Positions 1,923 through 49,946 of a stretch of 64,000 nucleotides of DNA are shown in pieces. The notes beneath the pieces are model-generated. The model was not told the DNA's origin. It made no database searches and saw only the letters and a list, made by a program, of their open reading frames with translations. Position 1 is the first letter of the stretch. Each line of letters begins with the position of its first letter. The stretch spans positions 30,938,001 through 31,002,000 of the forward strand of contig OX597822.1 of assembly GCA_951406725.2 (NCBI GenBank), read 5' to 3'. Origin of the DNA: Octopus vulgaris. Its lineage: Eukaryota. The translations under genes and the position numbers were made by a program.

Positions 1923-1968
1923 TCTAGGGACACCGTGTTTCAGGATCATTTTCCTTCATCGGCCTAGA
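1923..1968 (-). ncRNA. Minimal type I hammerhead-ribozyme-like motif (U4C core, GUC triplet)
   Basis: Minus strand: UCUAGG-CCGAUGA-AGGA(AAAUGA)UCCU-GAAA-CACGGUG-UC-CCUAGA. Helix I is 6 bp, helix II 4 bp, and helix III is the near-palindrome ACAC-G-GUGU. Confidence 0.75.
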
Positions 1969-2272
1969 GTAGCAGACACCGGTCAGCTGGTGATATTTGC
2001 CTCGACTTCGTAATTGTATATACATATATTCAGTGGAGTTTATTCACTGATTATCAAAATAAGAAATATTGAATTTCTAAATCTCTCGAGAGATTTAGAA
2101 ATTCAATATTTCTTATATATATATATATATATATATATATATATACATATACATATATGTACATACATATACATATACTTACATATAAATAAATAAATAA
2201 ATAAATAAATAAATATATATATATATATATATATATATATATATATATATATATATATATATATGTATATAT

Positions 2273-2476
2273 GTGACCTCGTGTGTACCGTTGGCGATTT
2301 TTTCCTCTGTCTTCCTTTCTCTGGATCTTTCCTTCTCCTATGTTTCCGACGAAGAGCTCCGCTCTAAACGTTAAGCCCTCCTTCTTCCCTTCTTTCCTGA
2401 GCGTCCAATAATCCTATATTTGTTCCACATCCTCGCGTTGTTGTGTTTTTTTTGTGTTTTCTTGTTTGGATTAACT
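2273..2476 (+). mobile_element. PLE terminal-repeat-like remnant between (TA)n tracts, with degenerate hammerhead motif at 2342-2376
   Basis: GUUU-CCGACGA-A-GAGC(UCC)GCUC-UAAA-CG-UU-AAGC. G12 is replaced by U, and helix III is the palindrome AACGUU. The segment is pyrimidine-rich and flanked by (TA)n on both sides. Confidence 0.6.
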
Positions 2477-3802
2477 ATATATATATATATATATATATAT
2501 ATATATATATATATACACGCAGACTCATAGTCATGTGTGCGAATATAGGTATAAATACATTCATATGTGCACACACATACACATATGTATATATAGGTTT
2601 ATGCCTGTGTTTGGGTGTATTTATGTTTATGTATTTATACTTACGTATATATACACACTCGTACACACGAGCACACAGAAAGGCAGCACACAGCCTGTCG
2701 TATATTCCACATATATTCATATTAAAGCAGAAGGAAATCCATTAATCACAATATATTTTCTTATAATTGGATTACAAGTTTGACTGATAATGCTAGTTTA
2801 GTCTTTTTAGCTTAAATCTAATTTTCCTAAAGGTCAGGCCATAGACACAAACAGTTTACATGCATAATAGCTTCTGTGTGTCTGCTTATGTACACGCTTT
2901 GTATATGTATAACTACATGGAAGATTCTTTAAATTTATTTATGTTAAAATTCATACTAGTTAATATTAGATCATCTCATATACATAGCTAATTTAGGCGC
3001 CTACACTTAATTGGAAATCATTAATGAAAAGCGTAGGCTAGAAAATTACCAGACACTTTAATGTGCCCGAACTAAAACACCTCTTAAGTGTTCGTTAAGG
3101 TTCATACTCTACACGCTAAAGATCTTAATCACCCGAAAAAGCTAGAAAGATTTTGCAAGGGTTTCAGATCCAGATGTTAGTTTTGCTTATGTCCTTTATC
3201 GCGTATGGAAGTTTATCTAGTGTTTATGTAATTTTAGCAAACCAGAGAGGAATTAAAGAATTTTCAGGAATATAGAATTTTCATTCTCTACAGTATATGA
3301 TGAGCGTTAGAAGTAAGAGATCATGTTACTGGAAACACTGGATCAGTTTTATTTCCTGTGAATAAACATAGAATAAAATTAGTCTTAAACCTGTGGTCCG
3401 CAAATGATGTGTAAACATCAAAAATGTAATTTTTGATGATGTGTATTTCCAAAGGCGGTTCATTTTTTGAAGTGCGGCATGTGCAAGCTTTTTAATGAAT
3501 ATGTGATCTACGAAGCACGATTGGCTAGTCCTATTGTGTAGTTTTTAAAGAAATGCGTTACTATATTGAATTATGCCTGTGTCTATAAAACATTATTGCA
3601 AGGACTGAGACTGCATCTACTTTGCATTTAAAATTATTTGGCGACAAATGCATTTCACATTCTTTTACGGCGTTGGAACTAACCTATATTGTTTTTCATA
3701 GGTTCATAATGCAAATTTCTAAGGCCGCATAAGAAATGTCGCTCTGGAAGAATGGACTGAAGAACTGTGTATAGAGCTATTCCATATCGTGAAATAGCTT
3801 TA

Positions 3803-46340: not shown

Positions 46341-48959
46341 CTTATATATATTACAACTTATATATATTACAACTCACTCTAGTGAGTGATATTTGATTTC
46401 CCTACAAACGCTTCATTCATACGCAATGAGCTATAGAAGTTCGTATTTTACTATTTAGTGTCTTCGTGTATGATAATTTGAATAACGCGTCTGCCTCTAA
46501 GTGAATACTTTAAACAAATTACAGAAGGTCATGATTTGAGAGATTATATTTGCAGGTATATAATTGGTTTGACATTCACAACATTCCCCCTCATTAATAA
46601 AATTTGACACTCTTGCTTGAAGAGAGAGTACATCGGCTGGTTTGCGAATAAACTTTATTAACTGCAGTTGGTAATCGTAACACATGAATCTAATTTCTGA
46701 ATGAAATTTGAGTGAGAGGGTTCTGTTTTTACTAAATAATGAGTTTCTACTGCATAAAAGCTCATAACATGATAAGTCCTGTATTTTCGTTTGATAAATC
46801 TTTGTCTGATCTTTTCAAAGTGCATTGGATGTGTAAGAAATAATGTGATATAACCGTTTAGAAGCAATCTATATGTGTATGGCCCGGAGTACCCCCACTC
46901 CAACCCACTTAAAAATGTTGTATCACGTATGGTTGTGCTAAGAAGATCACCTTAAAGCCATGTGGTTTCGCTTCAGTCCAACTGAACATTTGCTTAGGCA
47001 AAAGCGTTCTTCTTATAGATTTGGGCATCACAATCCTGGGCGAGTCAATTTCGTTGACGAAAACTATGGAATCCTCCCCGTACCACACAAATATCTTAAT
47101 CAATGAAATTCCAACTAAGTCTGATTTTCGCAGTTTATTATTTTAGAGATGTCAAATCTCCGTATCTTCAGCAGTATAGTACGACCAGTTGCATATAATT
47201 ATAAACATTTATACATATCAATACGAATATCATAATACGAGTAGCCATAATTATATATACAAATGGTCACATTTATATACGAGTTAAATCTAATCTATCT
47301 TCTTCAACACATGCAATGAAAGATATATATATATACATATATATATATATACATATATATATATATATATATATATATATGTATATATATATGTATATAT
47401 ATATGTATATGTATGTATATTTTTTTTATATATTTATGTATACGTATGTACAGTTATACTACAAATTTTGATAAGTATTTATAGATTTGGTTATGATCAC
47501 TAATTTTAGCTTATAATTATAACGGCATGGGAAAGACTTTATAGTGATACAACTTTTATTACATAAACAACGATATTTACATAAGGAAAATATTATTACT
47601 CCAAAGACTTATACAATATTAAAATTTACAATTTGAAGATCTTAAATAAATACATACTTATCTTAGCGAGGTTTAGCAATGAACTAAATATATATATATA
47701 TATTTAAACGCTTTAGTTTTAGTAGAACCTCATTGAAATAACTTATCATAACAGTATCATATTTAATAGCTGAATGTAACACGAGGCATTTACGAAACGT
47801 GTGTTATTAATCCCCATAAATCTTCTCAATTAACTATATAGTGTAGCTTGCTCAATGAACAGCGTTAACTTTATTCTCCGCCTTTTCATATCAGATAGCT
47901 AGCTAACTAACTGATTTCAAACAGTGAAGACAAGGTAATCTATTATAAATATTTCTTATGATTTGATATAATGGCACTATTATTACATATAGATTAAATA
48001 TCATTTCATATTATTTAACAAAATGACATAAAAATGTCAGAATATAAATTATTAGTATTGTTACGTACAGGCTATTTAATGTCAGGTTATGGACTTTGAT
48101 CTGCCACAGACTAAAATGTCATCTGCAATATTAATCATGTTAGATTGACATTTGAAAAGGCTTCTAATGATATCGTAATTTTTTTCAAGTACACAAGATA
48201 TTTCAGTTGTCAAATACTTTAAAAAATTGTAAAGCTGGATAAAACAAAACTAGAGTTGCATCACGCTATGATGGATCAAGTTCTACTTGGATATAATCCA
48301 TATTATGCACCGGTTGTTAGATGAAAAATCAAATAATTAGAATGCCAAGCACTTCATCTTCAGTAGTTATTGGACATTCTCAGATTTACGTACATATGTT
48401 TCTCAGTGCAGGGCCATACATACGCAAATGCATTTTTAATTCTTGAGTACCTTAACCAATAATGAATCCTATTTTATGAAGCATTGAACTTTCTCAATAT
48501 CTTTATATTTAACAAGGATTTAAACTCCTATAATGACATACCATTCTGTCTCCCATACTTTTCTATAAGTTTGACATAACAGATCATTGCTAATTTTATA
48601 TAATTATTTTTATACCCTTATCAATTTTGATGGAATACATCGGAGGATTATTAAACTATTTTGGCTGCTGAAAGAGAATATATGTAGTTTATTTTAATTA
48701 TACAAAGAGCACAAACCATATCACGAATATTGAACATCGACTAACTCATGGATTTACTCATAAATATCTTTTGATTATAGTGGAATGAAATGAGCTAGCT
48801 TTAATTACAATATGAATGCCGCCATGTAAACTTAAATCAGCGGTTTATGAGTTTATGAATATATTTGACCCAAAAAGAACGCGAAAGGATTAATCTTTAC
48901 GAAGTCTATACTTTTCGCAGTACAAACACACATGTAAACACACACACATATACACAAAC

Positions 48960-49270
48960 GCGTATATATTTATTACATAAAATCCGTTCTGTCTGTCTGT
49001 GTGTGTGTCTTCTAGGATCTCGGGCATCATCCATCTGATTGTGCTCAAATTTGATATGTAGATACCGACGGTATCAGGGCGTTTATAAGTCTTGAAGAAA
49101 TTACAAAAATCGATTCCAGGTGAGAATGCGTTCGATAAAGCCATGGGAACGTGAATTTGTACGCGCAAGTACATCAGCTTTTGCGATCGATACTACGCGT
49201 TGTGTGAATAAAATCGTTTTTCTTTGGAATAGAAAAAAATTCTACGTTTATTTCTTCTGTTGCTAGTGTC
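48960..49270 (+). mobile_element. Possible Helitron/DINE-like non-autonomous remnant
   Basis: tataaaatcc-like start, (CTGT)n tract, then gatctcgg..ctgattgtgctcaaatttg. This resembles the conserved 5' block of DINE/Helitron-type elements; no clear 3' hairpin or CTAG end confirmed. Confidence 0.3.
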
Positions 49271-49890
49271 TCAAATTTAGGTTAAATCAGTGTTTCACAA
49301 AGGGGACGTCTATGGGACTGTCAGACACGTTGTTTTGAGAAAATTTGGCTTAAATGGTTGATAACTCAACCCCGTCCATTGGACGAGGGCGTCTTGCTCG
49401 TATATATATATATATATATATATATATATATATATATATATATATATATATATATATATATATATATATATATATATATATATATAAGTTCAGCAAAATT
49501 TAGCTTCAGATGAATATGGTACTTAGGTTAAAGGCACCAGAATTTTGTATGGTATTATCTAAATAAATCAAATGGGGTGATTATAATCAAAATAAGCAAC
49601 AAGAATATCCAAGGTAGAGTAGTACAATTGTATGTATATATATATATATATATATATATATATATATACAAAATGTGGGGATTTAGTTCACAGGTGATCT
49701 AATTGACTAGGTACGCTAGATAATACTGAAACGGATTACCAGGGCTCCAATGTTATATCCGAGACAGCAGTTATGTAGATTATTTAGATTTCCGATATAG
49801 TGTATATATGATTATTAAAGAGGACAACAAACGTTAAAGCAACATAAACATCTCAACTTATATACGTTATTATTACTTGAGAATTTCAAA

Positions 49891-49946
49891 GCCTCACAGC
49901 TGTTTCTGGGATATCCCAGAGTAGTAGATATTCCGTCATCGGAGAC
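49891..49946 (-). ncRNA. Hammerhead-like motif (U4C core, GUG triplet)
   Basis: Minus strand: GUCU-CCGAUGA-C-GG-A-AUAUC(11 nt)GAUAU-C-CC-A-GAAA-CAGCUG-U-G-AGGC. Helix III is the perfect palindrome ACAGCUGU. Confidence 0.6.

What the first reader, a model, noticed from the sequence alone, without database searches (positions are those of the whole stretch)
1923..49946. Recurrent non-canonical hammerhead core (CCGANGA, U4->C) in at least four unrelated short elements
Seen: motifs at 1923-1968(-), 2342-2376(+), 8858-8920(-) and 49891-49946(-) have different helices and flanks. All read CCGA(U/C/A)GA...(G)AAA with a short (near-)palindromic helix III; G12 is lost in the 2342 copy. Known: minimal type I hammerheads with palindromic helix III occur in Penelope-like terminal repeats and cleave as dimers, and U4 is normally conserved. 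Inference: C4 creates a CpG, against the usual CpG->TpG decay, so four independent chance mutations are unlikely. C4 may be ancestral in a cephalopod PLE or small hammerhead-retroposon lineage using a variant catalytic core. I cannot tell whether this variant is already catalogued.
Basis: partly seen in the sequence, partly recalled or inferred. Interest (0 to 1): 0.75.

Follow-up and report, generated by a model that had tools for sequence, protein, structure and literature searches.

The report
Hammerhead motifs with a C4 core
Several very abundant short mobile elements of this octopus-sized animal genome carry Penelope-type hammerhead ribozyme motifs in which a normally invariant U of the catalytic core was replaced by C in the elements' source copies; the change is derived, did not stop the elements from spreading, and its effect on self-cutting is untested.

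Summary
Within each family most copies read CCGANGA, so C4 is not a private mutation of the window copies. The family majority also restores the defects of two window copies: G12 at site 2 and A17 at site 4. A fifth C4 family turned up in flanking DNA.

I ran one fixed descriptor over 344 kb with every single substitution of the ten core positions. Only the canonical core (16 hits) and U4C (73 hits) were enriched; all others gave 0-5.

C4 is not ancestral. In F2 the genome holds 10,294 CCG, 4,928 CTG and only 418 CCA exact words, and a tree with position 4 masked nests the C4 copies inside older U4 subfamilies. So U4 changed to C in a source copy that then made more than 10,000 copies. Canonical U4 hammerheads coexist in the genome.

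Insertion in (TA)n, 365-nt tandems and head-to-head pairs fit Penelope-like mobilisation. Catalysis is untested, because no raw RNA reads were available. Earlier scan notes report hammerhead-tailed SINEs elsewhere in this genome, but not the C4 core. Verdict: a new variant of a known kind, of moderate interest.

The parts
1923..1968 (-). F1 hammerhead-like motif, C4 at 1961. Helix I UCUAGG/CCUAGA, helix II AGGA/UCCU, helix III ACA/UGU with loop CGG, predicted cut after C17 (1929).
   Evidence: sequence; only full hit of the strict descriptor; helices I and II appear in the minimum-energy fold.
1765..2095 (-). F1 repeat copy (about 330 nt here; 365-nt unit in genomic tandems) lying between TA microsatellites. 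The motif sits at the tip of a roughly 130-nt rod hairpin (1880-2015).
   Evidence: copies 96-98% alike, at least 1263 first-look candidates, 5'-truncated on this strand; z -7.25; tandem and inverted spacing.
2342..2376 (+). F2 minimal hammerhead motif, C4 at 2347. One extra nucleotide after A9, G10.1-C11.1 pair, palindromic ACGU as helix III. This copy has lost G12 (T at 2365).
   Evidence: sequence; family majority has G12; features of Penelope-type minimal hammerheads.
2276..2484 (+). F2 repeat copy (about 210 nt) flanked by (TA)n on both sides; it belongs to the youngest, C4, subfamily.
8858..8920 (-). F3 hammerhead-like motif, C4 at 8913. Helix I is 6 bp plus a 1-nt bulge plus 3 bp; there is an extra C before G12; helix III is ACU/AGU.
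   Evidence: sequence; 34 of 39 copies read CCG; relaxed descriptor hit.
8725..8965 (-). F3 repeat copy. Here its 5' side is an inverted duplicate of its own 3' end (foldback).
49891..49946 (-). F4 hammerhead-like motif, C4 at 49941. Helix III is the palindrome ACAGCUGU. This copy has G at position 17 (49895), where the family majority has A. Helix II is 10 bp with one A.C mismatch.
   Evidence: sequence; 22 CCG, 8 CTG, 5 CCA of 37 copies.
49640..50250 (-). F4 repeat copy; elsewhere the family often occurs as inverted pairs.

Best explanation
These are genuine hammerhead-derived motifs of the Penelope-type minimal type I kind. They are carried by at least five unrelated families of short non-autonomous retroposons. 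The families insert the way Penelope-like elements do: into (TA)n, as head-to-tail tandems, and as head-to-head pairs with a 5'-truncated partner.

In each family a U-to-C change at core position 4 became fixed in a source copy and was then copied many times. This is shown for F2, hinted at for F3 and F4, and undetermined for F1 and F5.

Inference: the motif keeps the hammerhead fold. Such minimal motifs cut weakly, and only when two copies pair through their palindromic helix III in tandem or read-through transcripts. C4 lowers but does not abolish that cutting, which is why it is the one core change these elements tolerate.
For: Family-level C4:
- Sample alignments give F1 33 of 34, F3 34 of 39, F4 22 of 37 copies with C4.
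- Genome-wide exact words for F1: CCG 402, CTG 12, CCA 4.
- Contigs of four runs from four coded organisms show no other base at 5% or more at window 1960-1961.

Specificity:
- One fixed descriptor over 344 kb gives WT 16 and U4C 73 hits, 15 of the latter outside the loci centres I had targeted. Every other single core substitution gives 0-5.
- An untargeted fifth C4 family lies at L079 3047-3126.

Hammerhead identity:
- F2 has the extra base after A9, G10.1-C11.1 and palindromic 15.2-16.2, which are listed as hallmarks of Penelope-element hammerheads (PMC4209133).
- One G-C to C-G compensatory pair in helix I separates F2 from a sister family.
- All motifs lie on the strand along which copies are 5'-truncated.

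Direction:
- F2 CTG 4,928 against CCA 418 words shows a real U4 lineage.
- U4 copies are more diverged, and the C4 copies nest at the crown of a tree rooted on the sister family.

Penelope-type insertion:
- Among the first 100 F1 places there are 15 inverted pairs, all in minus-then-plus order, and 9 same-strand neighbours 362-366 nt apart.
- (TA)n flanks are seen. The published pattern is in PMC8557442.

Tolerance of U4C: a viroid U4C variant cleaves less in vitro yet stays infectious (PMC3088659, its ref 30).
Against: - No cleavage or RNA-end evidence: only assembled contigs were on offer, and these cannot show ends.
- Rfam hammerhead models do not hit site 1 even at E up to 10. They also miss a natural U4 copy of F1 and a canonical-core motif in L074, so this says little.
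- F3 and F4 need an extra nucleotide or a mismatch next to the core.
- A sister family of F2 carries A6U, a harsher core change. This suggests catalysis may not be needed at all.
- Penelope-type minimal hammerheads cut poorly even with canonical cores.
- The loci set was fetched with C4 families as bait, so the 73-to-16 contrast is inflated.
- No autonomous Penelope-like partner was found next to any copy.
- Exact-word counts favour young subfamilies.
Confidence: 0.6

Rival explanations
1. Dead ribozyme relics. The motif is kept, if at all, only as a structural tag, or merely hitch-hikes. U4C is an inactivating change that drifted to fixation in source copies, because self-cleavage is not needed for these elements to be copied.
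For: - A sister family of F2 amplified with A6U in the core.
- Penelope-type minimal hammerheads barely cleave in vitro.
- C4 subfamilies out-amplified U4 ones in F2.
Against: - If any inactivation were neutral, other transitions in the core (G5A, G8A, G12A, A13G, A14G and so on) should also be fixed in some families. They give 0-2 hits, against five families with U4C.
- All other core positions and the helices remain intact in the family majorities.
Confidence: 0.3
2. Selected attenuator or switch. C4 was favoured repeatedly because it turns a U.G wobble into a C-G pair in an alternative helix (C3-C4-G5 with a nearby CGG). That helix hides the core, keeping monomeric RNA uncut and allowing cleavage only in particular contexts.
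For: - The same substitution recurs in five unrelated families.
- A CGG partner lies within the motif in F1, F4 and F5, and with a bulge in F3.
- In F1 the alternative fold gains about 2.2 kcal/mol with C4 compared with a natural U4 copy.
Against: - The pattern was noticed post hoc.
- F2, the best documented case, has no CGG partner.
- Nearest-neighbour energies ignore the tertiary structure of the hammerhead core.
- There are no functional data.
Confidence: 0.1
3. Chance look-alikes. The repeats happen to contain CCGANGA and GAAA with pairable flanks and have nothing to do with hammerheads.
For: - Real sequence yields more descriptor hits than shuffles do, even for the A4 control.
- Rfam gives no hit.
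- F3 and F4 are imperfect.
Against: - Enrichment is specific to WT and U4C among 28 core versions.
- U4 ancestors of F2 have a fully canonical core with all the Penelope-type hallmarks.
- There is a compensatory pair in helix I.
- The Rfam controls fail on canonical motifs too.
Confidence: 0.04

Closest known systems
Minimal type I hammerheads of Penelope-like elements (Cervera and de la Pena 2014, PMC4209133)
   Same: Open helix I, an extra nucleotide between A9 and 10.1, a G10.1-C11.1 pair, a very short palindromic helix III that implies action as dimers, many divergent families per genome, and association with tandem and inverted insertions.
   Different: Position 4 is C instead of U in the majority of copies of five families. 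The carriers here are short (200-600 nt) non-coding elements, and no Penelope-like reading frame was seen beside them.
Metazoan non-LTR retrozymes (PMC7229834; preprint 10.64898/2026.07.22.740005)
   Same: Small (170-400 nt) non-autonomous repeats with type I hammerheads, highly self-paired RNA, tandem copies, and a proposed derivation from Penelope-like terminal repeats.
   Different: Here most copies are dispersed singles or inverted pairs; only short tandems (two or three units of 365 nt) were seen. Circular RNA was not shown. The core carries C4. Cephalopods are not mentioned in either paper.
Natural U4C hammerhead variant of a viroid (Ambros and Flores 1998, as cited in PMC3088659)
   Same: The same core substitution in a natural, replicating RNA. 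It is reported to lower cleavage in vitro yet remain biologically sufficient.
   Different: That was a sequence variant within a viroid population. Here C4 is fixed in the source copies of genomic repeat families with up to 10,000 or more copies. The original paper is not held in the library.

Membership tests
Hammerhead ribozyme | Conserved core C3 U4 G5 A6 N7 G8 A9 ... G12 A13 A14, with A15.1-U16.1 and a non-G at position 17 | tested here: not met
   U4 is C in the family majority of F1-F5. All other core positions are met in the majorities. Window copies of F2 and F4 have further private defects.
Hammerhead ribozyme | Three helices around the core, supported by covariation | tested here: inconclusive
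   The helices can be drawn in all five families. Only one compensatory pair was documented, G-C to C-G in helix I between F2 and its sister family. In F3 subfamilies the helix I bulge shifts but pairing is kept.
Hammerhead ribozyme | Site-specific self-cleavage | not testable with these tools
   Only assembled contigs of public runs were available; no raw reads showing RNA ends.
Hammerhead ribozyme | Match to the Rfam hammerhead covariance models | tested here: not met
   No hit at gathering score or at E up to 10. The test is uninformative: a natural U4 copy of F1 and a canonical-core motif in L074 also give no hit.
Penelope-type minimal hammerhead | Extra nucleotide between 9 and 10.1, G10.1-C11.1, palindromic 15.2-16.2 or loop 3 (PMC4209133) | tested here: met
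   F2 meets all three. F4 has the extra C, the G-C closing pair and the palindrome ACAGCUGU. F3 has G10.1-C11.1. F1 and F5 are near-palindromic.
Penelope-type minimal hammerhead | Location in the terminal repeat of an element that encodes a Penelope-type reverse transcriptase and GIY-YIG endonuclease | tested here: not met
   No such reading frame lies beside any copy in 344 kb. The reverse transcriptase fragments in L063 and L067 are LINE-type and not contiguous with F4.
Penelope-dependent non-autonomous element / retrozyme | Insertion hallmarks: (TA)n targets, head-to-tail tandems, and a head-to-head partner that is 5'-truncated | tested here: met
   F1: 15 of 15 inverted pairs are in minus-then-plus order with spacing 75-665 nt, and 9 neighbours lie 362-366 nt apart. 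(TA)n flanks were seen for F1, F2 and the F2 sister family. F4 occurs as inverted pairs.
Penelope-dependent non-autonomous element / retrozyme | Expression as unit-length circular RNA | tested here: inconclusive
   One 'goes back 290' joint appears in contigs of two runs whose RNA status is only a guess. Genomic tandems could explain it.

The most novel reading that the evidence does not exclude
U4-to-C is a repeatedly selected tuning of the hammerhead core in cephalopod Penelope-dependent retroposons. It keeps the fold but slows or gates cleavage, perhaps by strengthening a CCG:CGG alternative helix, and so gives the C4 lineages an amplification advantage over their U4 parents. That would be the first case of a non-consensus hammerhead core favoured by selection at genome scale.
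Probability: 0.15. Interest if true: 0.75.

Novelty: new variant of a known kind. Interest (0 to 1): 0.55.

Why it matters
The hammerhead core is among the most strictly conserved RNA motifs, and natural departures from it are reported as rare single cases. Here one specific departure, U4C, is fixed in the source copies of at least five unrelated, highly successful repeat families. In F2 the ancestor-to-descendant direction is documented and natural U4 and C4 copies sit side by side.

That gives a ready-made natural experiment on two questions. The first is whether self-cleavage is needed for Penelope-type non-autonomous elements to spread. The second is how much activity a C4 core retains.

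It also shows that descriptor searches which demand CUGANGA miss a large share of hammerhead-derived motifs in such genomes. I found no paper in the held library that reports hammerheads in octopus repeats.

Tried and rejected
- Rfam at gathering score and at E up to 10 gave no hammerhead. The whole-window list is swamped by TA/TG microsatellite look-alikes of microRNAs. Controls show the models also miss canonical minimal motifs here.
- The strict descriptor finds only site 1.
- Dinucleotide shuffles are too lenient a null, because the A4 control also exceeds them. I therefore replaced them with the all-single-mutant control.
- F4 as the 3' tail of a LINE: rejected. The reverse transcriptase fragments in L063 and L067 are not contiguous with F4.
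- tRNA-derived heads: ARAGORN finds none in the window. F2 has a T6 run near its 5' end on the sense strand, which argues against Pol III transcription.
- Common origin of the families: only the core and microsatellite flanks match between them.
- RNA evidence: no raw-read run was on offer. The contigs show presence in four coded organisms but no ends.
- Ambros and Flores 1998 is not held.
- The organism was not identified by me.
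Full report
**The observation**

Site 1 (1923-1968, minus strand) is a complete type I hammerhead fold apart from C at position 4. It has a 6-bp helix I, a 4-bp helix II with a 6-nt loop, a 3-bp helix III and a GUC triplet, and it is the only full hit of a strict descriptor in the window.

The other three window copies are weaker:
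- Site 3 has a bulge in helix I and an extra C before G12.
- Site 2 lacks G12.
- Site 4 has G at position 17.

The window holds 10 CCGANGA and 30 CUGANGA heptamers on both strands, and its CpG observed/expected ratio is 0.88. The general CpG-depletion premise is therefore weak. On the window alone chance cannot be excluded. The relaxed descriptor gives two C4 hits against 0.025 expected in shuffles, but the A4 control also gives two against 0.07.

**Each site belongs to a separate repeat family**

All four sites are copies of abundant interspersed repeats of the window's own 2.8-Gb genome. First-look candidate counts are 1263 for F1 (site 1), 1730 for F2 (site 2), 271 for F3 (site 3) and 995 for F4 (site 4). 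The families share nothing beyond the core and microsatellite flanks.

Position 4 in alignments of fetched copies:

| Family | CCG | CTG | CCA | Copies sampled |
|---|---|---|---|---|
| F1 | 33 | 1 | 0 | 34 |
| F3 | 34 | 4 | 1 | 39 |
| F4 | 22 | 8 | 5 | 37 |

The family majority also carries G12 in F2 and A17 in F4, so those defects are private to the window copies.

Genome-wide exact words for F1 are CCG 402, CTG 12 and CCA 4. Contigs of four public runs from four coded organisms show no alternative base at 5% or more at window 1960-1961.

In every family for which partial copies were informative, the motif lies on the strand along which copies are 5'-truncated, that is, the sense strand.

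I applied one fixed relaxed descriptor to the window plus 90 fetched loci (344 kb). It allows:
- helix I of 4 bp or more;
- helix II of 3 bp or more;
- zero or one inserted base on either side of helix II;
- helix III as a hairpin or a palindrome;
- any base but G at position 17.

I ran it with the canonical core and with each of the 27 single substitutions of the ten conserved positions. The canonical core gave 16 hits and U4C gave 73. Every other variant gave 0 to 5.

The five A14U hits are F4 copies in a shifted register. The loci had been fetched with F1, F3 and F4 as bait, which inflates the U4C figure. Even so, 15 U4C hits lie outside the targeted centres. They include untargeted F2 copies and a fifth C4 family in L079 (3047-3126, an inverted pair).

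About eight further families carry canonical U4 motifs, for example in L038, L074, L016 and L015. Some share flanks but differ in helix sequences. This genome is therefore rich in hammerhead-bearing repeats, and U4C is the one core variant that recurs at family level.

**Which state is ancestral?**

For F2 the exact 18-mers are 10,294 with CCG, 4,928 with CTG and 418 with CCA. CpG decay should give similar CTG and CCA numbers, so about 4,500 CTG copies must descend from U4 source copies.

Twenty U4 copies were fetched and aligned with the C4 copies in hand. The U4 copies belong to older subfamilies with their own diagnostic sites and are 79-93% identical to the window copy. The C4 copies are 88-96% identical to it, and most are above 91%.

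I built a tree with positions 4-5 masked and rooted it on a sister family. All C4 copies fall in the crown, nested within U4 copies. So U4 is ancestral in F2 and C4 is derived, and the C4 lineage then produced more than 10,000 copies.

The other families are less clear:
- In F3 the two most divergent copies sampled (L037, L072) form a separate long-branch group and both carry U4. That tree has no outgroup.
- In F4, CTG words outnumber CCA words 161 to 4, which hints at a U4 lineage.
- In F1 there is no sizeable U4 lineage with the word used.

**Are these real hammerheads, and of what kind?**

Apart from C4, F2 shows the three hallmarks listed for minimal hammerheads of Penelope-like elements (PMC4209133):
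- a nucleotide between A9 and 10.1;
- a G10.1-C11.1 pair;
- palindromic 15.2-16.2 (ACGU).

The older U4 subfamilies of F2 have the fully canonical core. A sister family (L027, L029) shares the F2 architecture. It has a G-C to C-G compensatory change in helix I and a different core variant, A6U.

F1 places its motif at the tip of a roughly 130-nt rod hairpin (z -7.25), much like the self-paired RNAs described for animal retrozymes (PMC7229834).

The insertion pattern fits Penelope-type mobilisation as described in PMC8557442:
- Copies have (TA)n flanks.
- Among the first 100 F1 places, nine same-strand neighbours lie 362-366 nt apart.
- Among the same places there are fifteen inverted pairs, all in minus-then-plus order (5' ends facing) with variable spacing.
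- F4 shows inverted pairs with a truncated partner.

No Penelope-type reading frame was found beside any copy. The reverse transcriptase fragments near two F4 copies are LINE-type and not contiguous with F4. ARAGORN finds no tRNA-like head in the window.

**Function**

Nothing here shows cleavage. Rfam's hammerhead models miss site 1. They also miss a natural U4 copy of F1 and a canonical motif in L074, so this is no evidence either way. Public runs were available only as contigs, which cannot show RNA ends. One 290-nt 'goes back' joint could equally be a genomic tandem.

What the literature says:
- U4 contacts the A6-N7 phosphate.
- A natural viroid U4C variant cleaves less in vitro yet stays infectious (PMC3088659).
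- Penelope-type minimal motifs cleave poorly, and only as dimers, even with canonical cores.
- Penelope-like clades without hammerheads proliferate well.

My best reading is that C4 is a tolerated change that lowers activity in motifs whose cutting is weak and dimer-dependent anyway. The main rival is that the motif is catalytically dead and cleavage is dispensable; the A6U sister family supports that rival. Against pure neutrality, no other core transition is fixed in any family.

A more speculative reading is that C4 was favoured because it strengthens an alternative CCG:CGG helix. That helix is available in F1, F4 and F5, and with a bulge in F3. In F1 it is worth about 2.2 kcal/mol. F2 lacks such a partner.

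**Comparison and novelty**

The closest known things are:
- the minimal hammerheads of Penelope-like elements;
- animal non-LTR retrozymes;
- the viroid U4C variant.

Strict membership of the hammerhead consensus fails at U4, so I file these as hammerhead-derived motifs with a variant core, not as proven ribozymes.

I found no paper on hammerheads in octopus repeats. A recent repeat annotation of O. vulgaris lists nearly 900 unclassified SINE families and active Penelope elements but mentions no ribozymes. I did not identify the organism.

Earlier notes of this scan report hammerhead-tailed SINEs with Penelope-type insertion, and permuted hammerheads, elsewhere in this genome. One note covers site 1 itself. 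None mentions the C4 core.

**Verdict**

- Observation: confirmed.
- Interpretation: partly supported. C4 is a source-copy trait, but it is derived rather than ancestral, and its catalytic status is unknown.
- Class: a new variant of a known kind.
- Interest: 0.55.

Noticed in passing
L027 2132-2167 (-), L029 962-997 (-): A sister family of F2 with the same architecture and (TA)n flanks, but with the core CUGUUGA (A6U, U4 kept) and helix I changed from GUUU/AAAC to CUUU/AAAG.
   Followed up: partly
L079 3047-3126: A fifth C4 family, seen as a head-to-head pair. Helix I is CUGU/ACAG, the core is CCGACGA, helix II is 3 bp with loop GGAA, and helix III is near-palindromic. Copy number is unknown.
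   Followed up: no
L038 2889-2949; L074 925-973; L016 1972-2025; L015 1778-1827; L085 2555-2604; L062 1906-1969: Canonical-core (U4) minimal hammerhead motifs in random flanks. L074, L016 and L015 share upstream sequence and a similar helix III but have different helices I and II, as expected for real, co-varying families.
   Followed up: partly
window 36693-36731 (-); also L052 and L030: A repeated U4 motif with a 7-bp helix I, a weak 3-bp helix II and a 4-bp helix III. It may be another hammerhead family or a look-alike.
   Followed up: no
window 1880-2015 (-): The F1 motif caps a long imperfect hairpin (-61.7 kcal/mol, z -7.25). In nearest-neighbour folding, C3-C4-G5 pairs with the CGG of the helix III loop, and this alternative is about 2.2 kcal/mol stronger with C4 than in a natural U4 copy.
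   Followed up: partly
window 2040-2100: A perfect palindrome of about 56 nt centred on CTCGAG at the 5' end of this F1 copy. It replaces the roughly 30-75 nt that other copies carry there. It looks like a foldback made at insertion.
   Followed up: no
window 1798-1831: Contig depth is several-fold higher here than over the rest of F1, with loose ends on both sides in all four runs. This short segment is probably shared with other, more abundant repeat families.
   Followed up: no
L009 2533-3159 (-); L063 3-1154 (+); L067 1-777 (+): A PIF1-type helicase fragment (Helitron-like) and LINE reverse transcriptase fragments in the flanks; they are unrelated to the hammerhead families.
   Followed up: partly
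window, many places (e.g. 22564-22626, 28280-28345): TA/TG microsatellites give dozens of sub-threshold Rfam hits to microRNA families such as mir-297 and mir-3149. These are compositional artefacts.
   Followed up: yes
G000 C1:59144006/59144281 and C2:98637717/98637972: Two F1 head-to-head pairs in which one partner has C4 and the other U4. This could be CpG decay after insertion, or copies made from different templates.
   Followed up: no
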